A DNA stretch of 64,000 nucleotides. Origin: Orbicella franksi (taxonomy: Eukaryota). Shown here piece by piece: positions 19,356 through 64,000 of the stretch. How positions within the stretch are numbered: position 1 is the stretch's first letter; each line of letters starts with the position of its first letter. A model generated the notes under the pieces. That model saw nothing but the letters and a program-made list of their open reading frames with translations. It did no database searches and had not been told where the DNA came from. The stretch lies in assembly GCA_964199315.1 (NCBI GenBank), contig OZ116699.1, positions 12,524,001-12,588,000 on the forward strand, given 5' to 3'. Position numbers and translations under genes: made by a program.

Positions 19356-19500
19356 NNNNNNNNNNNNNNNNNNNNNNNNNNNNNNNNNNNNNNNNNNNNN
19401 NNNNNNNNNNNNNNNNNNNNNNNNNNNNNNNNNNNNNNNNNNNNNNNNNNNNNNNNNNNNNNNNNNNNNNNNNNNNNNNNNNNNNNNNNNNNNNNNNNNN
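19356..19500. other. Assembly gap (145 N)
   Basis: Run of N in the sequence. Confidence 1.
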
Positions 19501-42264: not shown

Positions 42265-45200
42265 CTAAATTCCTTCATTTCCTGTTGTAATTGTGTGCCT
42301 TTTCGCATTTGGTTTGGAAATCTTTTCCTTTATTGTAGCATACACATCCTGTACCGGTCCTGCCCTCTGGACATTGTCCCTGATGCGATGAATGTCATTT
42401 CCCAGGGGTCTGTACAATGCTACAACTATGACGTATTTGCCGCTTGGACTTGGTGCTGCACCCATTCCTAATTGAGTGGTGTCTTTCCAAACCATCTGCG
42501 TGAAGTGCTTCACTTTATCGTTCAGCTCTGGATAAGAGAAGCTGAAAGCCTTCTTTTCACTGTACCATATCGTTGTCGCCTTCAGAGGCGCTCTCGGTAG
42601 GTCGTGCCAAATCTGAGCGATGTTCTCACCGACTGGCTCCCCTTGGAAGGTGGAAGGGTCGCTGGCTACAGATTCTGCTGTGCGCTGGGCTTGTTCAGCT
42701 AGGGTAGCATTCCACTGAAGAGGGAACACGTGATGCATCGCCCTGAGTTTGTTATGAGCCACCAGGGCTTCTTGAAATACTGCATCTGTTTTGATAGAGA
42801 ATAGTAATACATTTTCCTGTGTCACATATGGACTTCAGAACTAAACAAAATACAGATTTTCCCCTTCCATTTACCCTTCAAGCCCCAGTGCAAATGTAGC
42901 ATTTTTCTTATAGTGCAAGTTATGGAACCTTTCTACCTTCCAAAAACTCTGTTACCTCGTTTGTATCCCACAATTTAAAACTGAAAACCTCGATTCTCTA
43001 AATCGCCACCTTCTGTCGATACTTACTGCTGCCAGTGCTGCTCCTGTTACTGGGGGTGACACTGGTGATGATGTTGGTGGCCATGGTAGGGTTGGCCAAG
43101 GTGGTGGTGTTAGGAAGAGTTCCAGTTCCACTGGTATTTTTGGGCTTATCCTCCTGTTTAACGACGGCAATGCTGTCATTCTGAGGAGATTGGATGTTTC
43201 TGTTTTCATCATGCCTCTTCTGTTGATCTGCTTTTTCCTCGGCGATGTATATCTCGAGGGTTTTACGTGAAGCGGCTTTTGGTGGGTATCATGCACATGC
43301 AGGGGAAAAAAATTGAACAGAGTATGTCTATCTTTAAATGGAGATCTCACCCAGAGTTATCTTACTACCTCGAATGAACATCTAAGACACCTGGCAAACT
43401 TTCTCTTCGCGAAGAATATACTGGAATCTTCAGAAGCTGATTCACCCGTATTTCTTCCTTAGATGTATAAGCCGGACAGAATGGACTGTTTGGCTGACTG
43501 AAAGCTCCTGAATTTCTTAGTTGTTAATACTCCGACTAGTATCACGAGTACTGAGAGGGCGTTTAAACGAGTTAGGGGGGTAACAGTGGTGCAACACCTC
43601 AAACTAGCTGCGAGATTAGCTTCCTTGCAAAACGTGAGCCTCTCGGTAAAGTAAGTTACTAATTATTTCTATGCTCTCTCTATATACGCATTTGTCAACT
43701 GGACTGAACAAGGGATTATTTACGCAAGTAACTCACCTTCTGCAATGGACTCTTCTGGCCCGTATGCCGATTGCTTGTCATCTTCAGCCCCGACCAGTAA
43801 ACCTTTGTTCTTTAGCTTGTTCAACTCTTTTCCCAAAAAATGACCTATTATAGAATACAAAGTATCATATAATCAATACTCTAGACACATCTGTAGGAAA
43901 ATTTATGTTTTCTTTTAACTAAAAATGAGATTTAATTGAAGAACACTCTTCAGGATTTTACTGACCGAATCGAATATAACGGGCAAGGCCTTTCTCTGGA
44001 AGGAAAGAGTTTACAACTGTGTGCTCCGTATAAGTTGGACATGTTTTTATTGTAACCCACCTGGTCGCCTTCCATCTTGGATGATAAATTTGTCGTCATC
44101 CTGAGATTTGTATGGGCGCACAGCATCGAGTATCTCCTCCTTATTTCTCTCTCTTCCCGTTACTTCACTTAATATGTCTGTAGCAGGAGCTGACGTATCG
44201 TTTAATTCTTCCTCGTATTCACGTGTTTCATCAGTACCATCTGTAAATGCAACAAATCATCTTTGTGCGGTACAACCATCCCCGCCTCTAATGTGACGCG
44301 AATGGAGTAGTCCAAAGGCATTCAATGAACGTTTCTGATTACCATCTATACAATGGCTTTCCACTGACATAATTTCTTGGTACTATCGAGTTCACTTGAA
44401 ATATTAGTCTGCTTCTTAGCTCTCGGTCACTGTCCTCGTGAATGAAGGATGACGGATTATTTGCGTGGGTGATATGTAGGAGGGATGTTAAGATATAACC
44501 CTCAGGATTGCCTCCTACTTCAATTCCCCGAATGTTCCTTACACGAGATTGCCCTCAGTGGGGCCGATAAACAAAAGATATGAATCATGTGAATCTAGAA
44601 AATGAAAATGACTAGCAAATAGTTAATGTGCTAAAGAAATATCAATAAAGTCCTTTCAGAAGTGTCAACTTTAGAGGCTCGCTAATGGTGTTAATTACGT
44701 CGATACAGTTTATATACCTTCTGGAAGTGGCCTTTGAACTTCAATTCGCCTGTTACCTCGTCCAATCAACGGACTCAGAGATTTTGGTTTCTTTGTTAAG
44801 ACAACACCAGTATTGATCAGAACATCCGAACTCTTCTTTGTTGCATTTGCAATAAGTACGTGGTTTGTCCTAGTGTTGTGTGGACCCAGTTCTGCGTAGA
44901 GTTTCATAAATATACAGGATACAAACGTCAGAAAAAAGGCTCTCTCCAAGAGTTACAGGGATAAATGACCCTGCTACAATTGGTTTGCAATTCATGAAAT
45001 TAAAGGACCACTGTGAATTGCAGCATATAACCTAAGTGACATAATGAGATGAATTTTCACTTTTGTGTTATCTACACAGGCATCAACTACGACAACGAAG
45101 TTGTAACTACTTCTCGTGCAACACACCTCAGAGAATTTCCACGCAATGCCGTTGTTCTTCACGAACGATAACACGCGTTTTGTTTTGTACTTTTAGCTAC

Positions 45201-45423
45201 TTTTGGCTTATGGAATTAATAGCGACTGAAATGTACGAAAAAAAGACATGAAACGCAACTGTGATAAGCCTTTCTATCTGTTTAGGCTGGTTGTGTAACA
45301 GTATGGCTAGTCATTTGTTTCCCTTTCAAAGAACCTAAAATGTAACTCACCTTTTGCTTGTAACAAGACAGGAATAAGCAGCAACAGACTAACGCGTTTT
45401 AAATTAAGACGATTCAGTTCCAT
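42265..45423 (-). CDS. Secreted CAP (SCP/GAPR-1-like) domain protein, cluster gene D (about 434 aa, no TSP1)
   Basis: Exons 45423-45351 (signal peptide MELNRLNLKRVSLLLLIPVLLQAK), 44891-44718, 44240-44061, 43844-43737, 43275-43027 (AAG acceptor, less certain) and 42785-42265 (AHNKLR, GENIA, HFTQMVWK, VVALYRPLGN). All introns are phase 1. Confidence 0.82.
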
Positions 45424-47069
45424 TGTTTTATCCTCTCAACCGAGGGACCTGGAAATGGGACGGTTCATTATATAGATATCCTAATACACTTTAATCTTAC
45501 TTTTGTTTCGATGCTACAAAGTCTCGTGCCAGAGTCGTTTAATATATTGATACGGTTCTGAGAGAAGGCGAACTCTTATTGTCTTACGCGGGCTTCAGTG
45601 CCGGTAAATTACCGTCGTTATTAGAAGTTAATACGGCGGTTAAACTATATATGAATGACACTGTTGTTTTTGTACGTTTACTAAATTGGTGTTTAATGAT
45701 ACACAGCAGAAAAGTAAACAAACAATATACAAATATTACCTTTCCATCTTCGGCCATGAGAAACTCCATTTTGTTCTTCGCGAGCTGTTTAATTAAGACT
45801 CCAATTTACATTACATCATCCCGCTCTTAACCGACATCGAAGAAAAGTCGCTTGTCAATGGTAGCTGAGCAAGTTACTAGCCAGTGAAGAATCGATATTG
45901 GTGACCTCTTGGCTTAGTGTTATGAGCGAGAAGGCCAACAACAGGTAGCAATTCACAGATGAACGATTATTTAAGTTACTTTGCAGTGACCAACAGGAGA
46001 AATTACTTCAGTAACTATTTGAGCTTACCAGAGATGTCCTAAGCTTTGTCTTACCTGAATCGATAAGAGAGTCCTGTTTGGTTTTCAAACCGTTTCTTTT
46101 ATTTAAATCTGTGCTCGATTGACCATGAAAGAATTCTTAAGAGAAAAAGTTCTCGACCTTTTTTTCAGCTGCAATTGTGTGGTCGTTTCGTCTTCCAAGC
46201 AAGCGCGATTTGAAGGACTGTCAAAAACCGTTCCATTACATTATTGTAGTACCACCCAGTTGTTTAGTTTGCGACAGAACATTTCACGTATCACTCCGCC
46301 TTCCTTTCTAGGACGCAGGTGGCCTCTGTGATATGCTTTTTTAAAGTGTTTACTGAGAGTAACATAGCCACTACGGCAATTTCATTGGTGTGGATTCGTG
46401 CCTTCTTTAAAGGATATTTGAAATACGTCTCGTGCAATTTTTCAGACATGGATACGACGAAAATGTCATGTTGAAAATTATATGAATCATAACATCACTT
46501 GCCAAGTTAAGGATGTAAATTCTGGCTTACCTGTTTTACAAGTGTAAACTTGGTCACAGGTTTGACGCTAAAGCTGTTGTCGTTTCGCTTGTTTCCTCTA
46601 CATAAATCCGACAAAATGTTGGTTAATCGCGTCTTCCCTCGTCTTAATTTGCTAAATGCTACAGAAGCTGTAGCTGAGGTTTGCGAGTCATATATCGGCA
46701 GTGCTATGTACTTAAGGTTAGTTTTGAAAAAACGGAGCTTAAGACTTTTAGTTAAGCTTAGTTTAAAAAGCTACGTCAGAACAAATAATGCGGGGCTAAG
46801 GCTCAAAGTGTCTAACAAATCATTGACGCAGCACATCACCTCGGTGCTGTAATTGATAAAGAGGGCATATTTCACTTGGTATATGCGCCGATGATTGTTT
46901 ATGAACAAAATCAAACAATTAAATGCTCAAAATAAAATCCTCAAATGGTCAGTAATGTACATGCCAAAAGCCCAGTCTTGACACCCACAGCGCACACCCC
47001 GGTCATTCGAATAGTTCGTCTGGTCGCTATTCGATCATGGTGTCCATATCAACTGTGTTCGCCTGTATA

Positions 47070-47244
47070 CAGTGGAACCTCGATATAACGAAGTGCCAAG
47101 AGACCGGCAAAATATGTTCGCTATAACGAGGTTTCGTTGTATTGGGGTTCTTTTCCATACATTTTACGTCTATTGCTGGGGCGAACAATATTGTTATAAC
47201 GAGAACTTCGTTATATAGAGGCTCGTTAAATCGAGGTTCCACTG
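47070..47244. mobile_element. Tigger/pogo-like MITE, 175 bp
   Basis: TA|CAGTGGAACCTCGAT ... ATCGAGGTTCCACTG|TA. A partial copy lies on - at about 53265-53325. Confidence 0.88.
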
Positions 47245-47349
47245 TATTCTCACAATGGAGTTTTTTCGCCTTTACCTGGGGTTTACTCGGTCAGGAGATT
47301 TCGTAACATATAACTAAAAAAAATAAGTGATAATGTCATTCACTATGTG

Positions 47350-50300
47350 TCATTTGACATTTGCTAAACGTTTTCCTCTTTTAAATGTTGCATACAAATC
47401 AAGTTTAACTCCAGGTCGCAGGATGTTTTGCCGTAAATGGCCCTCACTAGAAATCGGTGGATCGTAAAGAGCGACGACAAAAGCATATTCTCCATTGACG
47501 CTTTTAGCTATAGCTAGTCCCATTTTTTTCGTTTCTTTCCATACAATTTGCACAAAATGTCGAGTTTTATCGTTTATCTTAGGGTACGAAAAACTGTACG
47601 ATTGAATTTCACTGTACCACTTCTCTATTGCCTTTTTGGCCGTACTTTCTCCAGTATACAGTATCTGAGCAACACTCTCCCCTTGCGGCTCTCGCAGGTC
47701 GTCCAAAGTAAGGAAATCTTTTGATGCCAAACTTTTAGCAATCTTCTCAGCCTTTCTTGCTAAGGAAACTGACCAGGACAGCGGTGGTGAGAAATGCTTG
47801 GTTCTGAGCTTGTTGTGCTCTTCCAACGATTCTCTTTCCACTTCATCTAAGATAACATGGTAATGATTAACATGTTTGAGTAAATGCGAGTAATTATAAA
47901 GTTAACTGAGTTTATCGTAATTCTGCAACATCAGTGCTTTGTGATATACCTGGACAAAAACGTTTTCGACAAGTTTTTGTTTGAAGCAAGTCTTTTTGAG
48001 AGCATGTGGTGACGAGGCAGATGCGTGCTCTCACAGACGTTCCTTTTCCACACGTCACTGAGCACGTGGACCAGTCGTTCCATTCACTGAACGAAACATC
48101 TGAGGAACAGATATCCAAGTCAACAGTTAGTATAATGTTGTAAAAAGCGTTAAAAGATTCTTGATTTGCTTCATAACGTTTCGCGCAATAAATCCACTGT
48201 AGAACACAAAACTATTGTTTTATCTGAATACTTAAGGAAAGCTCAATCTTTCCAAACTTCTCTATTATCTCAGGTCATCAAGCTGTTTCAACCTGTGACT
48301 GCTCTCGCTTTGCACACACTTTCGCGACTTATATAACCTATGGCAAATACTGCCATAAAAGAATAACATTTTTCAATGATTTTGTTGTTATTAAGGTGCT
48401 GACCTTTCTCGCTGCGAGTGTCATCATTTTCATCCTGAGGCGTTGGATGTATTGGATAGTAATAGAGATTCTTCAGCGAGACACTTGTCGGTATGTATCT
48501 TGAGGATTTCGTAGGAACAGATCTTGTAGCCCCTGTCCCTCTCAAATAAGATATGATGTTTTCAATTTTTATAAGGTCTCCTAAGGAGTAAATATCCGAT
48601 AAAGGATCATTGCTTTGCTGGTTTCTTCGGACGCCAGTTGACGTTGGCTTTTTACCATTTCCATAATCACGTGTGTGGCTGTAATGAAGCTGTGTCTTCC
48701 CCTTAAGTTGTGGTTTTTTGAAAGCAAGTTTTGTGCCAGGCGTTTGTTCGACTCCTTTCCAAGTTTCTTCCGCTTTTTGATTCATTAGCTGCTGTTCATC
48801 ATTGCCATGTGATCTAGTATTGTGTTCGGCGCTACGAGTTCCCTCACCTGTGTTCTTCGCTGTACCTTTTCCAGTTTCATAGAAAACTTTGGGAACTGAA
48901 AATGTCACTGAGGATGTGTCGGAATTCGAATTCTGGATAACTTTTGTTTCGCCGTGACGAGGTTTCACGACACTATCTACCTTAGACGATGTACTAGGTA
49001 TTTTTCCATCGTTTCCAACTTCATCACGATCAGTGGGTATGTGCTTGATACTTGTTTGATCTAATGTTTTGCTGTTGTCGAATTCTTCCTCCCTGGTATG
49101 AGAAATATTTTGGGTAGCTTTACCCTGGTTGATAATCTTATCCTCTTGGCCTTTGTCGATGTTGTTCTCTTGACTTTTTAATATGTGAGTATTTTCAATC
49201 ACTTGATTGTTTTTAGCGTTCTGCGTTTCGTGGTATTTTAGTTCCTTCGATTTATCGTTACCATTTGCATGATTTGTTTTGATATTGGCAATTTCTTGAC
49301 CATCCTTGATGACGTTGGCATTCGATTCTTGCTCATGGTTGTTATTCCCTTCGTCTTCCATCTCGCTATGTACAACCTTATTACTCTCTTTTTCAGAAAC
49401 CTCACCACTACCACTCTCGGAAGTCATATCATTATTGGAGTCGGTGTCTGCGTTATCATCGTCAGATGCATTGTATGCGTGAGTGCTTTCATCATCCTTT
49501 CTTTCACTATTTCTTCCACGATCACCTTTTCGCTGATTACGATCTGAGATATTGTCATTTAACATTGAAATATTTTCTTCACCATCGGAGTTTAATTCTT
49601 CCTCGCGGTCGTCCTGGTCTTGGTATTTTCTTCCAAGGTTTTCAAAGTTATTACTTTGGACGTCAGAGTTGACTAGATTATCGGTATCATCAACATTCTC
49701 GTAGTTATCAATATTTACGAAGTTGTCTAATTCTTTGTATAATTTTGCATCCTGGTTCTCTATTTGTTGGTTAAGATTCTTCATGGAAGATACTCGAGGT
49801 CTTTGCTCATCATACTCTTCGCTATCTTTATCATCTTCGTCGTACGATCTATCATCAATGGCACCGTCGTCAACGCCGTCACTAATACCATCCCATGATT
49901 TTTGCCCTTGGTCCCTGTTTTCATATTCAGAGAAGTCATCATGTTGGAAGTCATCATATTTGTTTTTCCATTTTGTTGTCTTGGCAAGAAGCTTGCTGAT
50001 CTGAGCATTAATGTGATTCGTTGGATCATCTTCATCTTGATCGTAATCTTGGAGAGAGTGCAAATTACTGTCGTGTGCAAACGAAGTGCTGTCCTTAACT
50101 GACGGGCCGTGATGTCTTCTACTACCGTCATTTCTGTGATGGAAATTAGAATGGGCATTATATTCAGTTTTGTCTTGATTTTCCTTATGAGTGGAGTACG
50201 TGTTGTGACTGAAACTATCTATATTTCCTAACACACTACTGTCCTCAAAGGACTTCACGTTAAAGTCGTTAGGATCTTTCATAAGCCAGTCAATAGCTTC

Positions 50301-51173
50301 TTGATTGCCTTTAAAGTCTGCTTTGGTTTCCACGTTGTATTCCGGCATATCCCGTAAATCGTATCCTCCATCTTTACTGCTATCGGAAAGTGATATCTGA
50401 TCCACTCCGTTCTTGTACTTTTCGCCTTCGTACTGGTCTCCATCTGCCTCCAGAGAAACGTCTAACGGACGAAAGTCTTCAATTCCATTTTCTTGAAGCA
50501 TCACTAATTAAAGCAATGAAAAAAATGGCTTCAGTTTACTTAAATTTTTTTTTAACTCTTGTTTTCCCCAAATGTAAAAAGACGCCCCTCCAGGTGCCAT
50601 GTAATTCTGTACTGGTTCCCTACGTATTACACTTGTTTAAAAAGAAGATTTGATTTTGTCTGGCGTAGCTAACAGCCACGCTTTATTGCTGTTACTTACT
50701 TCCCTCATCTCTACTGTCTTCAAGTAGTTTTGGTTTCACAAACGCATTCAAGTTGTCGAGGTCATGCGGAGCTACGCGACTGTTGAGGATCACCAGATCT
50801 GCATGCAACATACACAAGATTGATAAAACAAATATCACAATATAATGGGGCAGAAATTCATGCAAACGCCACTTAAAGCAAAGTACAATAACTCCAGTAT
50901 GCAATACGCCTCCAACGACTTTCAGTTACCTTGTAATGGCTTTCCCCTGTGAATCACGTCAATCTTTTTCCTGTCGATTCTTACTCCTGTAGAAAAAAAA
51001 ATCTCACTTAAAGAACGTTGGTAATGACGGCGATCCTATCCTGGCCATCATCATTATAACATTGTTGGCATTAGTTAAAAGATGAACGCGATGTTGTGAT
51101 GTCCCTTACCCTCAACACAGTTCTGTTCGATTGTGTGTAGAAATAATATCACCAAGACTGTTACGAAAGCCAT
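47350..51173 (-). CDS. Secreted acidic low-complexity + TSP1 + CAP protein, cluster gene C (about 988 aa)
   Basis: Exons 51173-51110 (MAFVTVLVILFLHTIEQNCVE), 50986-50930, 50798-50700, 50503-48404 (2100 nt, D/E/N-rich), 48099-47950 (TSP1 WNDWSTCSVTCGKG...RAR.C) and 47846-47350 (CAP: EHNKLR, GESVA, HFVQIVWK). All introns are phase 1. Confidence 0.88.
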
Positions 51174-51294
51174 CTCAAACATTCAGCTTTTAGAATCTAA
51201 ACAAATCAGATAGAATTATGTTACACTTTGCATTTACTCACGAAGAGTATAAGAGAAATTTTAAGAATAAATACTAACTGTTTCGCTTATCACT

Positions 51295-51547
51295 AGTTTC
51301 AGTAGCATGAAGCGTCTAGAGGTATTTCTACTCCCCCCTGGATGGGATGCTAGTCCATCGCAGGTTTACCTATCGCATTAAATTCACTAGTGCCCATTTA
51401 TACACACTGGGTGGAGAGAGGCACTGTGAGAGTAAAGTGCCTTCTCAAGAATGAGCACAAACACAGTATCCATGGCCAGGACTTGAACCCGGACCGCTCG
51501 ATCCGATGTTAATCGAGCTCACTAACCATGAGGCCACCGCTTCCACC
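51295..51547 (-). mobile_element. tRNA-derived SINE, family copy 2
   Basis: Highly similar to 500-808 (GCATGAAGCGTCTAG..GTATTTCTACTCCCCC.TGGATGGGATGCTAGTCCATCGCAGGT...GGCACTGTGAGAG). Confidence 0.85.
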
Positions 51548-54326: not shown

Positions 54327-54563
54327 GGGCGCTTTCTATGATTTAACTAACAAAAACCGAAACTTCCGAAGGCAGGGGCAAATGGTGCAGAAATTTCCTA
54401 AATATACGAAATTCGAACCATTCAACCGCAAATTCCGGACATTCCAACGGGAGAACCAATTATACCTTTCGAGGCTGTCCTCTTTTCGGGAAAGTGCTGT
54501 TACTTCGCCACTGGAAATTTCCGGAAAATCAAACCGGAATTTTTCGTCGAATGGAATGTGCCC
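54327..54563. mobile_element. PIF/Harbinger-type MITE just downstream of the gene B stop codon
   Basis: ATA|GGGCGCTTTC ... GAATGGAATGTGCCC|ATA, with a 3-bp TSD and imperfect TIRs. Confidence 0.7.
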
Positions 54564-54604
54564 ATAATTGTAATCACTAACAATCTCAATTTCCTATTGA
54601 CTGA

Positions 54605-57600
54605 CTATTTTCCACTTTGTGGCTTAGGCGTATGGACGTTAATTCTCTCTTCGTTCCTTGCGTTTCCAGGCGGACTGTAAAGCGCTACCACAAATGTGTG
54701 TTTTCCATCCCTACTCTTAGCTTCCCCAATTCCAAGCCATTTGGAGCTCTTCCATATGAGCTGGGTAAAGTGCTTGGTGGAACCATCGATCACTGGATCG
54801 TCGAAGTTATAGCTTTTGACCTCACTGTACCAGTCAGCGGTTGCTTTCTCGGCTGCGATGTCATAACTGTGCCATAGCCGAGCGACGTTTATACCTGAAT
54901 GTTCCTCTTTTAAATCCGACAAGCGGATGGCATTGTTGGCCAGTTCATTTGCTATTGCTTGCGCCTTAGCAGCCAAACGTTGTGACCACCTCAGCGGAGG
55001 ACTTTTATGCCATGTTCTGAATTTGTTATGCAGACGAAGTCCTGCTCTTCCAAGTTGTTCTGAAGGAAGTTAAGAAACGACATTAACAGAATTCAATACT
55101 GTAATGAGTGATTCAACGTTAAAACAATCCATTGTTTATCTTCCACTGGGTTAAGACACCTGCCCGTCAACGCCAACACACAATTTACTCCTTTTCTTGA
55201 TCGCTTAAATGACAGCAATTTAACTGACAGGATATTATAAAGAAAAGCCGGCTGCTCCGCAGATGACCGATTGTACTGCAACTGCCTCCAGAGGTCTGCA
55301 ATACTAGATTACTTACGATTTGAGTTCGAGTACGAGTACGAGATAGAGTGCGAGAACGACTTTTGAATTGTAGTTTGCAGGATCCACATTATCACAGGGG
55401 CCCTGGAAACGTCACTGGTTTGATATTTGAGAATCGTCCTTGCACTCAATCTCGCTCTCGTAGTCCAATCTAAAGGTCTCTATAGATCTGACTGACAAAA
55501 CAATCCTTCGGAGAATTTAGAGTTTTGGGATAAAAAACAAAATGTATATCTTTTGAAAAAAGGGAGGATTCATGCAACCTTCCTTCATTTGTTTCATTCT
55601 TACAGTTTGTCCTTCATAATTTATCATTCAGTAACTGCAACTTTTTGGTAAGTCTTACCAGTACAGGGCTGCATGAAACAAGCCTTGCTTTCCGTCTTAT
55701 GTCCCTTACATTGTGTTCCCTCGCACAACTGAGCTCTTGCTTGAATGCCTTGACCACAAGTCACTGAACATGGCGACCATGTGTTCCGTTTATCTGAATG
55801 TTGTACAGAAATTTATAGTATTTTCTCTTGGAATTCAGTCAATTTAAAATATCGATCTTAGGAGCGTGTCAGCGATTTAAACAACTTCTTTTTTTCCAAA
55901 ACATCGACGACCAAAAGGCAGTTGCTTCAATGGCAAACACACTGAGAAGTTAAGATCATTTTATCTATTTCGTGTTTCAACTGCATGTGGTGCAGGAACG
56001 TCTTTCATACTTCTAGTAGGTCGCTATTGCACTCTACTTTTAGCCAATCCTCGTAACGTCGCTAATCAATATTTGTCTTTTAGTATTCTCAGCTTTAAGT
56101 TCAAGTTGTGTTGTTGATGACTGTTAACCCTGAGGACAATAACGAAGGTTCTGGCTTAATTAATTATTATATTTTTAGTCCAGGGCCCCTCTGGATATTA
56201 GCCTCGTCGGGGCCACCTTGGCTAAATAAAGTTTACCTTTACCCTTACCTTTACCTTTACCTTTCCGTGATCATGTGGTGTCCCTTAATCTTAACTTTTA
56301 TGTAGCGAAAAGGTATGATCTACATGGACCGTCAACCTTAACGCATTGGGTGTGACATAACTTATAACAAAAGTGACCTTTTCAGGGTTCCAGATAAGTT
56401 TTCAACGCTGGTTGTCGAAAACGAATTACAGCGGGTCGATTTCCACTGCTCCCACCAATTCATTTTTAATTTTCTATTAATTTTTGGGTCATGTAGCTGA
56501 CCTTGTAGAGTTTTTGACCTGAGCCCCCCTACTTATCTGGAATACTGCCTTGTGGTCGCAGATCGGGTGGTTTCATAGTGTACCCATTTGTGGCATATCA
56601 TAGGGGATGTCGAGATGCATTGTTTCTTGAGAATGTTCCGATAAGTTAAGATTAAAATCCTTTAAAAACTTGCATCTACTGATTCACTGGAATATATTAG
56701 CGTCATTCCATACAGACCCAGTGCAGCCGAGGATAACGCAATTGTCCATTTCGTTGAAATCAAATGAAGATGACCAAAAATAAATTGAGGAAATACTAAA
56801 CGTAACAAAAATACCAAAATACCAACCATTCTTCGCATCAGTAGTTGTTCTCCCTAAGTCGTGATCTGGGCCAAAGATCAGCCTTGCCCTGTTTTCAGGA
56901 GAGCCCTCTATAAACTTAGAAGGCCTGAGGAAACTCTTCAAGGACAACATCTTGTTCTTTTCCTCACTTTCTCTTAGTTTTAAACCAGGAGGAAATATAT
57001 CAGATGGGGGTGATTGCCCTATTCCGGCAAAGGAAACTCGATTGAGCTCGTTGTACTTGGTTGGGGACATGCTTGAGCTCCTTTGCATATCATCGAAATT
57101 GCGACCTTTTGTTGGCCTCGCAGAGGCCGGAACGTTATAGGCGTCTTGAAGAACGCCATTTGCAGTACCGTCGTTTTCTTGATTTAACTTGTTATTCGTT
57201 TTCCCAAGGATCTGCCAGCTTAGTATTTCATTGTTTGAGCCAGTTTCGCCATGACCTTCAATCATATTTCCTTTCTTAGCAAATTCCTGCATTGGAGCTG
57301 TCTGGGTTTCCCAGAGATAATGGTTCATAAGTTCGGCATCTGTAACGATTTGATGTCTGGAGCTGCTATCGTCCTTTGTATTTTGAGCAGCTTCACTGGT
57401 AATCACTTTGTTTGTGTCTGAATTCATTAATGTGACGTTACCGGGTATCTTAAGCACTAGCGATCCGTCATTGCTAGTGCCTGCCTTGAAACTAACTGGT
57501 TTTCCTGCACCAGAAATTTTTAACGTAACAAAGTTTTCCTTTTGTGAGTCTTCGTCCTTGGATTGAATGAGGTTATTCAGCGATGGTCTGTCAACACCGA

Positions 57601-60600
57601 GAGATTCTGGAACAATTGGCGACTGAGTTTTAATTAGGTTATTCAGCGATGGTCCGTCGACACCGAGAGATTCTGGAACATTTGGCGACTGAGCTTTAAT
57701 CAGGCGAGAGGGTGTTAGTGGATCCCCTTGAAAAGCATGCCCCTGGATATGAAGGTTTAAACCCTGGGGTAAACTCAGTGCTTGTGTCACTTGTTCAGCG
57801 CCTAAACCGAGTGCATCTTTAGAGGATATCTTCCCTGAAGTTAAACTCCTTCCTTGTGAAGGAACCGTAGGAACATGGGCGTCGATAGCATTTGGTTGCG
57901 TTGCCATCATGGGTGTCTCTTGAGTTTTGAAAGGAGATATCGTTGTTGTCATTTTATCTGCCAGCAAAGTGTTAATGCCCATATTGTTTTGACCTGGATT
58001 CCCTTCCATCAATTTCTTGAGGAACTCCTGCTTAAGATTCTCCTCGCTCTGGTGTTCAGAATCATTCCGGTGTTTCAGCAGGTCAAGGACGACTTTTTTG
58101 CCAATAGTAGAAAAAAGGTCTGAATTATCGGAAGATATGTGTTGAGCCTCCTCTGGATAGTTATTAAAGCCTTGGAAGAGTTCTTTGTCCTGGGTATCAA
58201 GGTCCTGGTAATAATTTTTAGGCATTTCAAAAGGATTGTTTCCCTCATTAGAGTGATAATCTGAAACTTTGTCATAACCTGATTCCTTGTAGCTGTATTC
58301 AGGCAAAGGGTTGTCTTTATACATGTCTGTGAGTTTTCCCACATTAGCTGCCTGTGGCTGCTCTTGTTCTATCTGGCTAATCTGGCTATAGAATTCTTTA
58401 TCCATTCCTCCATTACGAAGTGTACCTACAAACGAATATACCATTGACAAATTTTGAACAGGAAAACATCTCTAAATCATGCTAAGTTTTCTGGTTGTTT
58501 CAAATTTATTTAAGACTTGAAGTTTGTCAAACTAGTTTGCTTTAGCATTATTTTTGTTGTGTTTGGAAAACTATAAATCAAACTTTTTTGTGAAATGTCA
58601 GACCAAAACTAAATTTTACTTTAAAACATCACCTTCTGCTTTTTCAATACCAGCATATTTGAACGATGGGAGTTAAACTTAGCTTTGTCTATTCGTATGG
58701 GTTTGCAAGGGGGAGGGAGACTGGGCATGTAGGAATATCTCGAGTCAACATCCATACATCACTGATCCTAGATGGGTCGACTCATCTGTTGCTTCAACGT
58801 GCATTTATTGTTATGGGCGCATGCACGTGCGGAAGTATAGTGGGTGCTTACTCATATCTTCTGCTCTCCCCATTTCATCTCTTGTTACCTTTGCGACAGG
58901 GTTTCTACTTTCCTTATTATCATCTGGAGGAGAAGAAAGTCATCGTTACCCACATAGTCAGGCTGCCTCAGAATAAAATCCGTTTGGGACAGATGCAATG
59001 CAAGTGAACTCAAGAATCTAAGGAGAGTTGTTCCTTGGTATTTTACTATCATAAATTACTCGGTTTCTCTAGCTGGAAAAGATGTATTAAATTCGGCTCG
59101 CTAGTCTAGCGTTGATCTGTTTCCAGAGAAAATAATAGTATTCGTGGCAGGCTTTGAAAAGTAACTGAAAAATGATCTCCGCTTTCAATGCTCGTCGCGG
59201 ATATTACATCATTCCTCTTCTTTGCTGGTTGATGATACCTCTTTCTGTCGTTTAATATAAAGTGAATTTCCTAAATAACATACCGTTGATTCTTGCCTTC
59301 TGACGAGAAGGATCAAGTAGATCATCTCCATCAATCTTTGAGTCATCCTGATTTACATCAACTTCTGCTTAACGATAGTACACACAAAAAGCTCATGAGT
59401 GTTATAAATGCTTTCCGAAAACTTAAATGTCCTAATGCTTGACAATAAATAACAACCTCTCACTTGCACACAATCTCCTCCAAATTTGTGCCATCGATGT
59501 TATGGCGGTGGCCTACTGTTACCAGAGAGGGAACGTTTAAAATAAGTAGCTGCTAACTACAGGAGCTAGACTACAATTTTTAAGACGTTTTAAATACAAG
59601 TGACAGATGGGAGATTACCTTTGTTGAATTGTTTCACTAAATGCTGATCTATTGGAGACAGCTGTCCCGAATACAGTAGAGCACTGTTTGTTAATCGCTG
59701 TTCGTCTGAAAAAAAGTTAGGAACTACTGGGTAACTAAAGATTAGACTTAGACGTATATTACTCGCATAAGGAACAATTAGTTAACTTGTTTTTCCGGGA
59801 TGGTCGCCATAATAAACTGTAAAAAAAGTGGCATCGGCACATCCTGTTCTAGTTTGGAATGTAAGCCATTGCAGAATAAGTTACGGTGATAGTATAATGA
59901 TGATTCCTTTAGAAGAGCGGTGGTGTAATAGTAAGCGCACTTGACTCAAAATCCAGCGGTATGGGTTTCAGCCATGGTCGGGGGCAATGCATTGTGTTCT
60001 TAGGTAAGACACTTAATTCTCACAGTGCTTCTTTGTCCCCAAGTGCATAAATGGGTACCTGCGAATTAAATGCTGAAGGTAATCCTGTAACCGACTAGTG
60101 TCACATCCAGCGGGGACTAAAAAACTCTTAAATCTACGTAAACCGGTATAAACTCCAGCAACTATAAGGCACTTTGACCCGATAGAAAATTATGTGCTAC
60201 AGTGTATAGCAATGATAAATCCTGGAGAACAAAATAATTATGTTACCTTGAATAGCTGGTAGTTTTTGTAGAAAATTAACATCACTTTTTCTTGAGCCAC
60301 CCGCATCTAACGACACAAATATAATATAAGTTGAATTTTGATTTTGCAGAAAAGCAGTGATATAAAACAATTTAATAATATTTCAAGCCACTGTGAGTTA
60401 GCGTCACTAACCTCCATTCCTAACCGTTAAAATTTCCTCAGGTTTTATTCCAATGAGGGCCGATCGCGCAGTTTTCTCGTCTGGAAGAGCGGTTTTCTTT
60501 TTGTGATGTTTGTTTCCAGATTTCTTTCCTAGAGACCCTACAGTGGTAGTCTTATTAGATTTTTCTCCTTCAAAGTATAATAAAATATTTGATGTAGAGA

Positions 60601-60673
60601 TGCAACAAAACTCACCCTTAGTCCAGAACAGCAACACCAGTATAAGCAGCTGGGCTCGTTTTATCGTGATCAT
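54605..60673 (-). CDS. Secreted low-complexity + TSP1 + CAP protein, cluster gene B (about 795 aa)
   Basis: Exons 60673-60616 (MITIKRAQLLILVLLFWTK), 60306-60247, 59364-59284, 58425-56827 (1599 nt), 55793-55659 (TSP1 WSPCSVTCGQG.QARAQLC) and 55059-54605 (CAP: LHNKFR, HFTQLIWK, VVALYSPPGN). All introns are phase 1. Confidence 0.86.
55298..55475. mobile_element. MITE-like element with TACGAG repeats
   Basis: TAGATT...TACGAGATAGAGTGCGAGAACGA versus inverted TCGTCCTTGCACTCAATCTCGCTCTCGTAGTCCAATCTA. Confidence 0.5.
56170..56264 (+). mobile_element. 3' end of a retroposon with AATAAA and an (ACCTTT)n tail
   Basis: ...GGGGCCACCTTGGCTAAATAAAGTTT followed by ACCTTT/ACCCTT hexamer repeats at 56232-56264. 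Confidence 0.5.
57567..57704 (-). repeat. 66-bp (22-aa) in-frame tandem duplication in gene B
   Basis: LIKAQSPNVPESLGVDGPSLNN / LIKTQSPIVPESLGVDRPSLNN / LI. AGGTTATTCAG recurs at 57570 and 57636. Confidence 0.92.
59915..60182 (+). mobile_element. tRNA-derived SINE, family copy 3, degenerate, in a gene B intron
   Basis: GAGCGGTGG.GTAATAGT head, then TGTGTTCT.GGTAAGACACTT..TTCTCACAGTGC...TAAATGGGTACC core, matching the reverse complement of copies 1 and 2. Confidence 0.7.
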
Positions 60674-62385
60674 TCTTTACGCTTCTTAGTTTTTGTTTCC
60701 ACCAAGAACATGGTTGCAATTTCCTGTTTAAGCACTTCATTTGAAAATAATTGGATAGCGTAATATGTCAGCATTTCAACTAGAAAATGGAAATTTAATA
60801 TAAAAGCATATGTTACAGTTACTGAAGCAGGATTACATAGACAAAATCAGAACATCTTGTATCTGGCCAGTGTTCTAGTGCTACGTGCAAGGAGAAGCCT
60901 GGAACATGGGACTCGCGAGAACTGCCCTCCTATCTCTCAGTCACTAGGTTAAAAAGAAATTTGAACCGAGCAGTAGCCGCTTCAACTCGGCCAATTTCCG
61001 TCATGAAAGGGACAACTTTAACCATTTTCATCAAATCTTTTGGTTTATCTTACATTCATTTCTTCACAAATAACACTAATAAATGCAATTATGTCATGTC
61101 AACTGAGTACAGAGTATCGGCTCTCAGTCTTTTGAGTTTAAGCTACAATATATATATATTTTTTACTTCCATACGATAATTGGGGTTCAAGAAACGTCTG
61201 GCTTTATTTTTCCTTTATCATTAGACTTTGTTTATAAGGCACGACACCAGCGTTTTTGATCTCTACATGGGATTCGTTAACAAGTACTAGATCAGCAATA
61301 CATGCCACCCTTCAGGTCAGGCCACAAGTAGTTTATTTCGATATTGGATTTCTTGGAAATTCAGCGCAATAGACACAGGAGCAACACGAAAAATTGATCC
61401 CTACAGTAAACGTACCTTTTATATTTCAGGCCCATTTCTGGCTGTTGATATAATATGTTTTTCCTTTCTTAGCAGGAATCCATGTTCTTTGACGAAAACA
61501 GGGTTAAATAAATAATGAAATGCATCTTAATCAGGTGCTCTACTCATGACATAATTACGTGTCAACAACACCACGGTTCGCGGTTTGAATGAAGAGCTGA
61601 CCTTCAGACTCACTGGTGTTTCTGAGGTTCACTAATAATCTTTTGTTAAACGCTTGAGGCTTCTGGGCTCGAAGGTGTAAAGCTATTCGGACAAATACAT
61701 TTGTTTATATAGACCACGAGAGACTGAAGAGCAGAACTCCAAGTCTAAATGTGCAGGGAATATTCAAAGTTTAGTGTGGCACCCTGATGCTGCAAGATAC
61801 ACAATTTTTGCAACATTTTCTTACATTATGTTGTTTTACGGCAAGCCGTCAACGGTGAACTTCACGTTGCCGATAGCAATTTCGAGATCACTGTGCAGGG
61901 AGTTTTCATTTGTTTTCGTTGTATTACAGCCTCCATTCGTCCAGTGTGGTGTGGGATGAGTCAGGGATGCGGGATGAGGACAGTTAAAAGGCCATTTCCT
62001 GTGGTATTCGAGTGTTCCTTACCAGAAAAAAGTATTGCCATAGTACGGTGTGAAAAGTATAACGTCCCTATCCCTGCATTCAGGGCACACTAATCTGTTG
62101 CACTCCCGTATACACATTAGCTCTTCTACGAGTGGTGGTGTCCACTTGATTTGATTTTGATCAAGAAAACAGGCCATTTTAAAGATAACTTACTTTAATG
62201 AAAAAAGTTCATTTTATTATCCAATCGCAAATTATACTATGCATTTACACGAACTCGAATAAAATTCGTTAATCCGCCAACAGGTGTCAAGAAGACAACT
62301 GGTATGTTTCTGTTTTCTTCTTTATCAACAAAAGAACACGAGAGTTATGGCTTAACTCAATAAAACATTCTGTGAATAAGGTCTG

Positions 62386-64000
62386 TTAACCAATCGTTGA
62401 ATTTGGTAGCAGTTGTGTCCTCTTAAATATTGTGGAATAAACGTCCTGTGTCATGGTTCCTTTGTTAATGACATTTTCTCTTAAAAATTTTCGATCATTC
62501 CCAGGCGGCCTATACAATGCCACCACATACAAATCATTTGTGGCGACATCCTTTGCACATCCCATGCCTATTTCTTTGCTCCCTTTCCAGATCATCTGAG
62601 TGAATGCGTCGGTCTGCGGTGTAACTCGTGGATACGAATAGCTATAATTACGTGATTCGCTGTACCATATATCAGTTGCTACCGTTCCAGCATCGTTGAA
62701 TGGAACACCAGTTATCTTTGCTACATTTTCTCCATAGCCCATCGAAGTTGCCACTTCAGATCGTTGCACGGTTCCCCTCATGGCCATGTCATATGCCATT
62801 TTCTCTGCTTGAGTAGCAAGCTCATCCGACCAACGGAGATTCGAAGAATGATGTTCTTGGCGATAGTGATTATGAGCTTGAAGGCCCTTCTCAGCGAATG
62901 TCTCAAGATCTAAGGGAACGGAGAGCAATACAACAAAAGGTAAACAAACGACCCTCAAACAAGCAAATAAAAACACCTGAAGGGACAAAGACAAACCAAA
63001 GGAAAACCTCCTCATATAATAATAAAACGCCTCACTAAATATATTACAGGAACACTCTATTGACTGAACTTGAACAGCTTCGATAGTATTTAACTGTAAA
63101 GTCTACGAGTTTAAACGTGCACAATATATCATCCACTGTGTACTTCGCCGCCTACGTACAAAATTCGTCACTGGAGAGTGTTTTACGCGAACTTACGAAC
63201 ATTACCTTCCTTGATGTGCTGTACCGTGCTTGATTCCTGCCTGTCTCTTGGCATTCCGAGCTCTGTGGCAGACTCAAATAATACATTGTCTGATGGACCA
63301 AGGGGTTTTGTTGGGGAAACTGATTTTGTAATTGGCTCAGACGGGGACATTACCAGATCTTTTAACGGGTCAAAAAGCACGTTTGCATGAGCAAGCTCAG
63401 GGGGTTCTTCTTGTCCAGCTGCTCTGGTAAAGGCAGACAATTCTCCGAAGCGTGGTTTTTCTTGGTTTTTATCATCTTGCAAAAATCGAGTCTTTTTTTC
63501 TGGTTGAACGTAATTTACGGGTGTTGGGTCATTTTTTATACCTCTCACACTTCCTGTGTTTGTGGTCTGGGCGCTTTGAAGGCTTGGAAGTTGATTTCCT
63601 ACCAACGAGTCTAAATCTGTCGGATATCCTATTAACTGTTTTCCCTGCAGACTTTTAATACTTGATTGCACCGCCTGCAATAGCTTCTTAACGGCTTCTG
63701 CGAATGCAGCTGTGCTTTGTGACGTTGGCTGTGGCTTTCTGGCTGGCTTTCTATTCACATGGTAACTGTCGGGTTCTTTTACAGCACTTCCCTTTAATGA
63801 GGGTAAAATCCTTACGCTATATCCAACTCTGGTAGTTGGTTGCACTTTCACGTCGCTCGGAAAGCTTCGTGTTTCATTAGTCACTGCACTTCTTGAAGGC
63901 CCTGCAATCCCTTTTTCAAGCATTTCTTGAGACACTGGTTGAGCGTCGTTAAGTTTGCCTAAAGTGTCCACAATTCCTGTATGTTCTTTCACCGACTCGG
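62386..64000 (-). CDS. Low-complexity + CAP protein, cluster gene A, 5' partial
   Basis: A large S/T/P/Q-rich exon is open from the window edge to a donor at 63206 (GAAG|GTAATG, phase 1). The CAP exon is 62909-62386 (AHNHYR, GENVA, FTQMIWK, VVALYRPPGN, DVYSTIFKR...*). Confidence 0.85.

What the first reader, a model, noticed from the sequence alone, without database searches (positions are those of the whole stretch)
42265..64000. Tandem array of four secreted low-complexity-(TSP1)-CAP genes
Four co-oriented paralogues (D, C, B and partial A) share one plan. It is a signal-peptide exon, a small exon with a basic-basic-x(1-2)-DV motif (KKSSDV, RKKIDV, RKSDV), an unalignable low-complexity region of about 240-750 aa, an optional TSP1 exon and a terminal CAP exon. 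Conserved ends around rapidly diverging middles suggest a specialised extracellular family, such as skeletal matrix, mucus, cnidocyte or gamete-coat proteins (inference). I do not know a described family with this architecture.
Basis: partly seen in the sequence, partly recalled or inferred. Interest (0 to 1): 0.7.

Follow-up and report, generated by a model that had tools for sequence, protein, structure and literature searches.

The report
Ancient array of secreted CAP proteins
Four neighbouring coral genes encode secreted proteins with a long, probably floppy middle and a GAPR-1-type CAP domain at the end; the gene row is at least partly as old as the coral/sea-anemone split, none of the four has been studied, and their closest described look-alike is the coral skeleton protein ectin.

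Summary
Four minus-strand genes (A-D, transcribed in that order) each have a signal-peptide exon, a paralogue-specific middle and a terminal Cys-poor CAP exon. B and C also carry one TSP1 exon. All 17 coding introns are GT..AG and phase 1. RNA reads confirm D's splicing and the last two junctions of C. Annotated orthologues in Oculina, Stylophora, Montipora and Acropora match A, B and C.

- The middles are not low-complexity (about 4.0 bits). They are unalignable between paralogues but conserved between orthologues, and are predicted mostly disordered with short conserved helices or strands.
- D's main isoform has a 153-aa middle. The roughly 240-aa version needs a cassette exon that the sampled RNA skips.
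- The basic-basic-x-DV motif is weakly supported and not deeply conserved.

The CAP domains are GAPR-1-like, but none has the full His/Glu tetrad. The A-B-C-D order recurs in Stylophora and the A-B pair in Nematostella, and Hydractinia has an A-like gene. The family is therefore old and not skeleton-specific.

A related TSP1-then-CAP plan is already described: ectin (Acropora skeletal matrix), and CR_3-4 of red coral. These four orthogroups appear in no paper I could search. The most likely role is extracellular matrix or coat proteins, which is inferred. Interest is moderate.

The parts
63206..64000 (-). Gene A, 3' part of the large middle exon. The exon runs on to 65188 beyond the window, and the signal-peptide exon is at 65408-65345. 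The middle is basic (pI 9.8).
   Evidence: The open frame continues into L013. The splice solution reproduces the orthologue junction ...HIKE|DLETF.... Identity is 74% to Oculina LOC144638816 and 59% to Stylophora LOC111335057. AlphaFold gives mean pLDDT 38.7 with isolated helices.
62386..62909 (-). Gene A terminal CAP exon, including the stop codon.
   Evidence: Pfam CAP E 9.5e-17. Identity is 92% to Oculina. The tetrad His is replaced (DAFTQ).
60616..60673 (-). Gene B exon 1, the signal peptide (MITIKRAQLLILVLLFWTK-G).
   Evidence: Sequence read. The donor is AGG|GTGAGT. It matches the N-terminus of Oculina ACROYT_G005413.
60412..60537 (-). Gene B exon 2 (126 nt, phase 1-1).
60247..60306 (-). 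Gene B exon 3 (60 nt), which carries RKSDV.
   Evidence: The motif is kept in Oculina but not in Acropora, Montipora or Nematostella orthologues.
59598..59705 (-). Gene B exon 4.
   Evidence: Orthologue-guided splice refinement. tblastn gives 86% identity to P0062.
58852..58923 (-). Gene B exon 5.
56827..58425 (-). Gene B large middle exon (1599 nt).
   Evidence: Orthologues occur across Scleractinia and in Nematostella. Invariant PEY and ...LKIP blocks. AlphaFold is mostly below pLDDT 50, with one helix and a small beta unit at residues 306-348.
55659..55793 (-). Gene B TSP1 exon.
   Evidence: Pfam TSP_1 E 1.3e-11.
54605..55059 (-). Gene B terminal CAP exon.
   Evidence: Pfam CAP. Identity is 86% to Oculina. 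The tetrad Glu is replaced (GINVA).
51110..51173 (-). Gene C exon 1, the signal peptide (MAFVTVLVILFLHTIEQNCVE-G).
50930..50986 (-). Gene C exon 2 (57 nt), which carries RKKIDV.
   Evidence: Unique pattern match at 50956-50972, with none expected by chance. Matches Oculina ...GRKKIEV....
50700..50798 (-). Gene C exon 3 (99 nt).
   Evidence: 87% identity to Oculina P0020 residues 43-80.
48404..50503 (-). Gene C large acidic middle exon (2100 nt; middle pI 4.9, net charge -52).
   Evidence: RNA contigs join its 3' end to the TSP1 exon, seen as a loose end at 48101.
47950..48099 (-). Gene C TSP1 exon (WNDWSTCSVTCGKG).
   Evidence: Pfam TSP_1 E 5e-9. RNA joint 47846|47950.
47350..47846 (-). Gene C terminal CAP exon.
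   Evidence: Pfam CAP E 1.1e-20. Identity is 88% to Oculina.
45351..45446 (-). Gene D first coding exon. The ATG is at 45423 and the signal peptide reads MELNRLNLKRVSLLLLIPVLLQAK. Non-coding leader exons lie upstream, from 45738 or alternatively 46053.
   Evidence: RNA joints 44891|45351, 45446|45738 and 45446|46053. Translation.
44718..44891 (-). Gene D exon carrying KKSSDV.
   Evidence: RNA joints on both sides in three runs. The orthologue transcript P0272 has KKSEDV.
44061..44240 (-). Gene D middle exon.
   Evidence: RNA joints. Canonical sites appear after the 2-nt ambiguity shift.
43737..43844 (-). Gene D middle exon.
   Evidence: RNA joints 42785|43737 and 43842|44059.
43027..43275 (-). 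Candidate cassette exon of gene D (249 nt, phase 1-1, Ser/Thr-rich). The spliced reads seen here skip it.
   Evidence: 45% identity to residues 166-247 of Stylophora LOC111335052. It is in frame, with an AG acceptor and a GTAAGT donor. Depth in the reads is low and no joint was reported.
42265..42785 (-). Gene D terminal CAP exon.
   Evidence: Pfam CAP E 3e-19. RNA joint 42785|43737. Identity is 91% to Stylophora D.

Best explanation
The region holds a compact four-gene array, transcribed in the order A, B, C, D on the minus strand.

Each gene encodes a secreted modular protein made of:
- a cleavable signal peptide;
- a long, mostly disordered middle that differs in every paralogue: A is basic with conserved short helices, B is near neutral with a small beta unit, C is strongly acidic, and D is short with an optional Ser/Thr-rich cassette;
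- one thrombospondin type-1 repeat, in B and C only;
- a C-terminal, nearly cysteine-free CAP domain of the GAPR-1 (GLIPR2) type whose His/Glu metal-binding tetrad is incomplete.

The array arose by tandem duplication of a signal-peptide, middle, CAP gene. At least the A/B split predates the sea anemone/stony coral split. The middles then diverged beyond recognition while CAP and TSP1 were kept.

The following is inferred, not shown. The proteins are extracellular matrix or surface-coat (matricellular-type) components. The CAP head binds or oligomerises (lipid, sterol or protein) rather than catalysing. The TSP1 repeat anchors to matrix or glycosaminoglycans. The disordered middle acts as a spacer or scaffold carrying short conserved binding motifs. 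Acidic C is the best candidate for a skeleton-associated member, by analogy with ectin.
For: Shown:
- CAP and TSP1 domains.
- Complete open frames with only phase-1 GT..AG introns.
- RNA-supported splicing of D and of the last two junctions of C.
- Agreement with independent gene models in Oculina, Stylophora, Montipora, Acropora and Nematostella.
- The only hydrophobic segment in each protein is N-terminal, and none has a hydrophobic C-terminus.
- GAPR-1 is the nearest solved structure (1SMB, E 1.2e-36).
- The tetrad is incomplete. By my reading of two separate alignments, none of the four has a His at the first-His position. B has Ile for the first Glu, and A has Ala for the second His.
- The CAP tree gives four orthogroups at 97-100% support (92/86 for D if the cerianthid sequence is included). 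B+C+D are grouped (87/95), the A clade includes Nematostella and hydrozoans, and other CAP exons of this genome fall outside.
- Synteny: the fused Stylophora model PFX21780.1 reads A-B-C-D, A is followed by B on a related coral contig and in Nematostella, and B and C carry consecutive Oculina locus tags.
- The middles are predicted disordered with short conserved elements.

By analogy:
- Ectin and CR_3-4, which combine GAPR-type CAP with TSP1, are found in skeletal organic matrix, and ectin marks skeletogenic cells (PMC7853314, PMC3748352, PMC13060117).
Against: - No protein-level or cell-type evidence was obtained for any of the four.
- No signal-peptide predictor was available, so secretion rests on hydrophobicity, exon structure and the presence of TSP1.
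- A and D lack TSP1.
- GAPR-1 itself is cytosolic.
- RNA libraries hold B at word shares above its exon fraction, so that evidence may include DNA or pre-mRNA.
- One poly(A) run gave no reads at all (X21).
- CAP-domain ligands are unknown.
Confidence: 0.6

Rival explanations
1. The family is dedicated to biomineralisation. Its members are skeletal organic matrix proteins like ectin, secreted by calicoblasts, with acidic C binding calcium or carbonate surfaces.
For: - Ectin (two TSP1 repeats, then a C-terminal GAPR-like CAP) and CR_3-4 are in coral skeleton proteomes. CR_3-4 is the second most abundant protein there.
- C's middle has 11.5% Asp, net charge -52 and pI 4.9.
- Named C orthologues found so far are all scleractinian.
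Against: - A and B have orthologues in the non-calcifying Nematostella, and an A-like gene exists in Hydractinia.
- None of the accessions appears in searchable papers, including skeletome papers.
- A is strongly basic.
- Orthology to ectin was not tested.
Confidence: 0.15
2. The proteins are venom or nematocyst components, that is CAP-domain toxins or capsule proteins made in cnidocytes or gland cells.
For: - CAP proteins NEP-16, -17 and -20 are released from Nematostella nematocysts (PMC3627010).
- The D-like protein of Ceriantheomorphe brasiliensis is deposited as a 'toxin candidate'.
- A GAPR-1-like protein co-purified in Stylophora haemolytic fractions.
Against: - The nematocyst CAPs are described as short single-domain proteins, whereas A, B and C carry disordered regions of roughly 650-750 aa.
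- There is no Cys-rich toxin module.
- The 'toxin candidate' label is an automatic transcriptome call.
- The identity of the Stylophora protein is unknown.
Confidence: 0.12
3. The proteins are intracellular and membrane-associated like GAPR-1. The N-terminal hydrophobic stretch would be a signal anchor and the CAP domain would face the cytosol.
For: The CAP domains are closest to cytosolic GAPR-1 and lack the disulfide cysteines of secreted CAPs.
Against: - The N-termini look like cleavable signal peptides, each encoded by its own exon, and none has the Met-Gly start that myristoylation needs.
- B and C contain a six-cysteine TSP1 repeat that needs the secretory pathway.
- Ectin and CR_3-4 show that GAPR-type CAP domains are used outside cells in corals.
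Confidence: 0.05
4. The pattern is an annotation artefact, or decaying copies. On this reading the shared plan is a chance juxtaposition of CAP exons with open reading frames.
For: - Stylophora's first annotation fused all four genes into one 3242-aa model.
- The D cassette exon is not used in the sampled reads.
Against: - All frames are open and all splice sites canonical.
- Spliced reads support the models.
- Each gene has orthologues over hundreds of millions of years with conserved middles.
Confidence: 0.02

Closest known systems
Ectin (Acropora millepora skeletal organic matrix protein, UniProt B3EWZ8; XP_029191629)
   Same: It has a signal peptide and TSP1 repeat(s) upstream of a C-terminal GAPR-1-like CAP domain. 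It is an extracellular coral protein (PMC7853314 supplement file 10, PMC3748352).
   Different: Ectin has two TSP1 repeats, a Cys-rich N-terminal stretch, and a short Ser/Thr/Ala linker between TSP1 and CAP. It lacks the roughly 650-750-aa middle placed before TSP1. Its CAP contains cysteines. A and D here have no TSP1. I did not test whether ectin falls inside the A-D clade.
Corallium rubrum CR_3-4 'CAP-like' skeletal matrix protein
   Same: It combines a secreted GAPR-1-type CAP domain with TSP1 repeats and a Pro/Thr-rich low-complexity stretch. It is abundant in the organic matrix (PMC7853314).
   Different: The domain order is reversed: CAP lies at the N-terminus, followed by TSP1 and a mucin-like repeat. 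It is an octocoral protein, and the gene has 14 exons spread over 37 kb.
Human GAPR-1 / GLIPR2 (PDB 1SMB, 4AIW)
   Same: It is the best solved match to the CAP exons (E 1.2e-36) and shares the lack of conserved disulfide cysteines.
   Different: GAPR-1 is a 154-aa cytosolic, Golgi-associated single-domain protein with no signal peptide and a complete His/Glu tetrad (established knowledge). Here the domain ends long secreted proteins and the tetrad is incomplete in all four.
Nematostella nematocyst CAP proteins NEP-16/17/20 and Hydra NOWA
   Same: They are cnidarian secreted CAP-domain proteins from an expanded gene family. Nematostella has 60 CAP gene models, and this genome has 87 CAP-exon matches (PMC3627010).
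   Different: The NEPs are short single-domain proteins, and the paper describes NOWA's CAP as highly derived. NOWA's other domains (C-type lectin and minicollagen-type Cys-rich domains) I give from memory. None of these has the disordered middle or the TSP1-then-CAP ending.

Membership tests
CAP superfamily (Pfam PF00188) | Significant match to the CAP/SCP domain profile above the curated cut-off. | tested here: met
   All four exons score 41.8-75.1 bits against a cut-off of 21.1.
GAPR-1 / GLIPR2 subfamily | Closest similarity to GAPR-1 among solved CAP structures. | tested here: met
   1SMB/4AIW at E 1.2e-36, ahead of Pry1 and PR-1.
GAPR-1 / GLIPR2 subfamily | CAP domain without the conserved disulfide cysteines. 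| tested here: met
   The CAP parts contain 0, 0, 0 and 1 Cys.
GAPR-1 / GLIPR2 subfamily | No signal peptide; a cytosolic, N-myristoylated single-domain protein (established knowledge of GAPR-1). | tested here: not met
   Each gene has a hydrophobic N-terminal signal-like exon, none has a Met-Gly start, and the proteins are 351-988 aa with extra modules.
GAPR-1 / GLIPR2 subfamily | Complete CAP tetrad (His54, Glu65, Glu86, His103 in GAPR-1 numbering, which I give from memory). | tested here: not met
   Reading the HMMER alignment to GAPR-1 together with alignment A1, none of the four has a His at the first-His position. B has GIN in place of GEN, and A has DAF in place of xHF.
Thrombospondin type-1 repeat proteins (PF00090) | A TSP_1 profile match with the six-cysteine pattern and the CSVTCG core. 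| tested here: met
   B has E 1.3e-11 and C has E 5e-9. No TSP1 motif was found in A or D.
Ectin-like coral matrix proteins | TSP1 repeat(s) N-terminal to a C-terminal GAPR-like CAP, behind a signal peptide. | tested here: met
   This holds for B and C, where the TSP1 exon directly precedes the CAP exon. It does not hold for A and D.
Ectin-like coral matrix proteins | Two TSP1 repeats plus a Cys-rich N-terminal stretch, with a total length of about 430 aa. | tested here: not met
   B and C each have one TSP1, there are no cysteines outside it, and the proteins are 870-988 aa. The ectin sequence was read in the PMC7853314 supplement.
Ectin-like coral matrix proteins | Common descent with ectin, meaning ectin's CAP nests with the A-D clade. 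| not tested
Ectin-like coral matrix proteins | Presence in the skeletal organic matrix proteome. | not testable with these tools
   No searchable paper lists the accessions of A-D orthologues. Raw spectra cannot be searched here.
CRISP / venom allergen CAP proteins | A disulfide-rich CAP with a C-terminal hinge and Cys-rich (ion-channel regulatory) domain. | tested here: not met
   CAP is the last domain, nothing follows it, and it is nearly Cys-free.

The most novel reading that the evidence does not exclude
The array is an old cnidarian 'matrix kit' whose members work together. The neighbouring genes make oppositely charged disordered proteins: A's middle has net charge +33 and C's has -52. 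These could co-assemble outside the cell by charge-driven condensation. The shared GAPR-type CAP heads could supply oligomerisation, since GAPR-1 is reported to form amyloid-like fibrils on acidic lipids (cited in PMC7853314). The TSP1 repeats could tether the assembly to matrix. In stony corals such a template might have been taken over for skeleton deposition. Nothing here tests co-assembly, and the idea rests only on charge, synteny and analogy.
Probability: 0.08. Interest if true: 0.75.

Novelty: new variant of a known kind. Interest (0 to 1): 0.4.

Why it matters
This points to a deeply conserved, completely unstudied set of secreted proteins shared by corals and sea anemones. An 'intracellular-type' (GAPR-1) CAP domain here serves as the end module of long disordered extracellular proteins.

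The A-B pair exists in Nematostella, a genetically tractable model. The role of extracellular GAPR-type CAP domains could therefore be tested there directly by knock-out, tagging and cell-atlas look-up, which would also bear on the function of ectin and CR_3-4.

There are practical annotation fixes as well. The genes are currently mis-split, fused or mis-named: a 3242-aa 'GAPR-1' model, 'myb-like protein F' and 'nucleolin-like'.

It is not a new kind of system. CAP expansions and CAP+TSP1 matrix proteins are already known in cnidarians.

Tried and rejected
- **Profile-profile comparison of the four middles (hhalign).** All six pairs gave probability below 2%, so no hidden homology was detected. 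Only short shared strings were seen, and I treat them as weak hints: PEY in B and C, and ...LKIP in A and B.
- **ESM Atlas look-alikes for the A and B middles.** No usable hit.
- **AlphaFold of the A and B middles with 31- and 36-sequence alignments.** Mean pLDDT was 38.7 and 44.7, so I ran no fold search. The C-terminal helix in the B model is intron read-through in the ORF used and is ignored.
- **Literature searches by accession or locus.** I tried Stylophora, Acropora, Oculina, Nematostella and Hydractinia orthologues and found nothing. 'CAP domain' plus 'skeletal organic matrix' also found nothing. The Euphyllia gonad paper matched 'SCP' only through synaptonemal complex proteins.
- **Exact look-up of Oculina P0020 for synteny.** Not on record. 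I used locus tags, other contigs and the fused Stylophora model instead.
- **Ectin orthologue in this genome.** A degenerate DNA pattern found nothing. A scan of 25 other CAP-bearing loci of this genome found no TSP1 motif within the DNA fetched around each CAP exon (1.5-8 kb).
- **The library-wide profile search.** It was dominated by multi-CAP proteins and showed little about architecture beyond six useful single-domain hits.
- **Run X21.** It laid no reads at all, which is uninformative.
- **B's presence in RNA libraries.** Word shares exceed its exon fraction, so I do not count this as proof of transcription.

Full report
**1. What is there**

The window is G000:C2:12524001-12588000 of a stony-coral genome. 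Between 42265 and the window's end, four open frames on the minus strand hit Pfam CAP (PF00188) at E 3e-19, 1e-20, 2e-10 and 1e-16. Stop-to-stop translation of the minus strand also shows two TSP1-like exons and three very long open exons. The TSP1 exons are confirmed by Pfam TSP_1 at E 5e-9 (gene C) and 1.3e-11 (gene B).

The fourth gene (A) runs off the window. I fetched the next 9 kb (L013) and found the rest of its large exon and a signal-peptide exon.

**2. Gene models**

I used Oculina patagonica orthologues as guides and required GT..AG sites and an open frame. This gave:
- A: 856 aa, 3 exons
- B: 870 aa, 8 exons
- C: 988 aa, 6 exons
- D: 351 aa, 5 coding exons

All 17 coding introns are phase 1. 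That pattern is typical of shuffled extracellular modules (established knowledge).

D was built from RNA alone. Poly(A) raw reads (X23) and two sets of RNA contigs (X1, X5) show joints 42785|43737, 43842|44059, 44240|44718, 44891|45351 and 45446|45738, with an alternative leader joint 45446|46053. Joined, these give one open frame from ATG 45423 to the stop at 42265-42267. A transcript-derived orthologue of 337 aa has the same layout (P0272).

For C, the CAP/TSP1 joint 47846|47950 is seen in an RNA contig. A loose end at 48101 continues into the last codons of the large exon.

**3. Secretion signals**

Each protein begins with a basic, then hydrophobic, stretch that fills exon 1. This is the only window of 19 residues with high hydropathy in the whole protein, and the C-termini are hydrophilic. 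C's TSP1 has WxxW and both repeats have CSVTCGxG, which match the published consensus sites for C-mannosylation and O-fucosylation. That is an inference from known consensus, not a test. No signal-peptide predictor was available.

**4. The middles**

| Gene | Middle length (aa) | pI | Net charge |
|---|---|---|---|
| A | 657 | 9.8 | +33 |
| B | about 647 before TSP1 | 6.2 (segment incl. TSP1) | -7 (segment incl. TSP1) |
| C | about 748 before TSP1 | 4.9 (segment incl. TSP1) | -52 (segment incl. TSP1; 11.5% Asp) |
| D | 153 | not noted | not noted |

Cysteines occur only in the TSP1 repeats, plus one in A's CAP. Entropy is 3.9-4.1 bits, so 'low-complexity' overstates it.

Between paralogues the middles are unalignable even profile against profile (probability below 2%). 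Between orthologues they align over nearly their whole length:
- A: 75/60/47% identity to Oculina, Stylophora and Montipora
- B: 73/46/24% to Oculina, Montipora and Nematostella
- C: 64/34/31% to Oculina, Porites and Montipora

The CAP figures for the same pairs are 92/87/80, 86/67/50 and 88/71/68. Many columns are invariant across 31 and 36 sequences.

AlphaFold with these alignments predicts mostly disorder (mean pLDDT 38.7 and 44.7). It also predicts isolated helices at the conserved blocks of A, and a helix plus a small beta unit around the invariant ...VTLKISG...LKIP... block of B.

**5. The small-exon motif**

[KR][KR]x(1-2)DV occurs once in every protein. In C, D and B it lies within the first 71 residues, each time in a small phase 1-1 exon. 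In A it sits at residue 372. Composition-matched shuffles give a hit in 4-15% of trials per protein.

The motif was defined after the fact, and it is not kept in Acropora, Montipora or Nematostella B. In Oculina C it reads RKKIEV. I treat it as real in the sequence but of uncertain meaning.

**6. D's length**

Stylophora's RefSeq D (LOC111335052, 448 aa) has about 85 further residues between the fourth exon and CAP. Its residues 166-247 align at 45% to window 43279-43025. There an in-frame 249-nt exon with an AG acceptor and a GTAAGT donor exists (43275-43027).

The reads here skip it. There is low depth over it but no joint, and one unspliced contig spans the intron.

**7. The CAP domain**

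A profile of the four exons and their orthologues finds human GAPR-1 first (1SMB/4AIW, E 1.2e-36), then yeast Pry1 and plant PR-1. I compared the HMMER alignment to GAPR-1 with alignment A1, using GAPR-1 numbering from memory for the His/Glu tetrad. None of the four genes has a His at the first-His position. B has Ile for the first Glu (GINVA), and A has Ala for the second His (DAFTQ). WYSE is invariant. This argues for a binding or assembly role rather than a metal-dependent one, which is an inference.

**8. Age and synteny**

Each gene has its own orthologues:
- C: Oculina ACROYT_G005412, Porites lutea, Montipora ('myb-like protein F'), Acropora digitifera
- B: Oculina ACROYT_G005413, A. millepora LOC114965693, Montipora, A. 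muricata
- A: Oculina, Stylophora LOC111335057, Montipora
- D: a coral transcript, and a Ceriantheomorphe 'toxin candidate'

A library-wide profile search added Nematostella LOC5506678 (A7SLZ5, 850 aa; signal peptide, middle, TSP1, CAP) as a B orthologue. It also added Hydractinia LOC130645285 as an A-like protein.

In Nematostella an A orthologue lies directly upstream of B on the same strand. Its middle is 29% identical over 528 residues and its CAP is 67% identical. A related coral contig shows A followed by B.

Stylophora's first annotation fused the whole array into one 3242-aa 'GAPR-1' protein that reads A-B-C-D. RefSeq splits it into four genes.

A maximum-likelihood tree of CAP domains gives four orthogroups at 97-100% support (92/86 for D once the long-branched cerianthid sequence is counted). 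It groups B+C+D (87/95). It places Nematostella and hydrozoan sequences in the A clade, and it leaves the other sampled CAP exons of this genome outside. The root is midpoint only. Rows were a chosen sample, not all 87 CAP exons.

The genome has 87 CAP-exon matches in several tandem clusters. In the 25 other CAP-bearing loci I could fetch, no TSP1 motif lay within the DNA fetched around the CAP exon (1.5-8 kb). No fifth family member adjoins the array.

**9. What is known**

No searchable paper cites any orthologue accession. Related architectures are described, however:
- Ectin of Acropora millepora (B3EWZ8) is a skeletal organic matrix protein. It runs signal peptide, Cys-rich stretch, two TSP1, Ser/Thr/Ala linker, C-terminal GAPR-like CAP. 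It is used as a marker of skeletogenic cells (PMC13060117).
- CR_3-4 of Corallium rubrum, a GAPR-1 CAP followed by two TSP1 domains, is the second most abundant skeletal matrix protein. It is listed as one of 11 proteins shared with scleractinian skeletomes (PMC7853314).
- CAP proteins are also released from Nematostella nematocysts, but those are short (PMC3627010).

I could not test whether ectin belongs to the A-D clade.

**10. Verdict**

The extracellular reading is well supported by sequence features. The specific role is inferred: matrix or coat proteins with a CAP binding head, an optional TSP1 anchor and a disordered scaffold.

The family is old (the A-B pair is shared with a sea anemone; an A-like gene exists in Hydractinia) and therefore not skeleton-specific as a whole. 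Acidic C remains a fair skeletal candidate.

It is a new, unstudied variant of a known kind (cnidarian secreted CAP and CAP+TSP1 proteins), of moderate interest.

Noticed in passing
window 47027-47290, with a depth peak at 47200-47399: A short interspersed element lies between genes D and C and carries an open frame with the string EPRFNEPLYNEVL. RNA-contig depth there is 700-960, against 6-130 around it. Reads break off at 47246/47247 into several different continuations. This looks like a highly transcribed repeat present at many loci.
   Followed up: no
Stylophora pistillata PFX21780.1 (P0284) against the window genes: [quoted passage not shown] RefSeq splits it into four genes, one of them named 'nucleolin-like'. 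Montipora's C orthologue is named 'myb-like protein F'. These names are annotation artefacts of the acidic middle.
   Followed up: partly
G000:C12:23898255-23898728 (+), loci L007 and L024: A further A-like CAP exon sits on another chromosome. It shares with gene A the absence of a His at the second tetrad position (DSFTQ; gene A reads DAFTQ) and has GMGCA. It groups inside the A clade with a 224-aa library protein, so it is probably a short signal-peptide-plus-CAP relative.
   Followed up: partly
window 45738 onward and 46053 onward (minus strand): Gene D has two alternative non-coding leader exons, both spliced to 45446. The joint 45446|45738 is seen in three runs and 45446|46053 in one.
   Followed up: no
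genes A and B: A residues about 372-395, B residues about 445-475: The most conserved block of each middle ends in the same string: ...SWVLLKIPK in A and ...GSLVLKIPG in B. Both are invariant across orthologues, and in B the block is predicted as beta strands. B and C likewise share an invariant [LM]PEY. These may be the last traces of common descent of the middles, but they were not significant in profile comparison.
   Followed up: partly
window 19356-19500: A run of 145 N (an assembly gap or masked stretch) lies outside the finding.
   Followed up: no
G000 genome-wide: There are 87 CAP-exon matches in at least eight tandem clusters (for example C2:17.98-18.00 Mb, C13:13.07-13.29 Mb, C9:17.77-17.85 Mb and C2:19.37-19.42 Mb). 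Several carry internal stops. This is a large, partly decaying CAP expansion comparable to the 60 gene models reported for Nematostella.
   Followed up: partly
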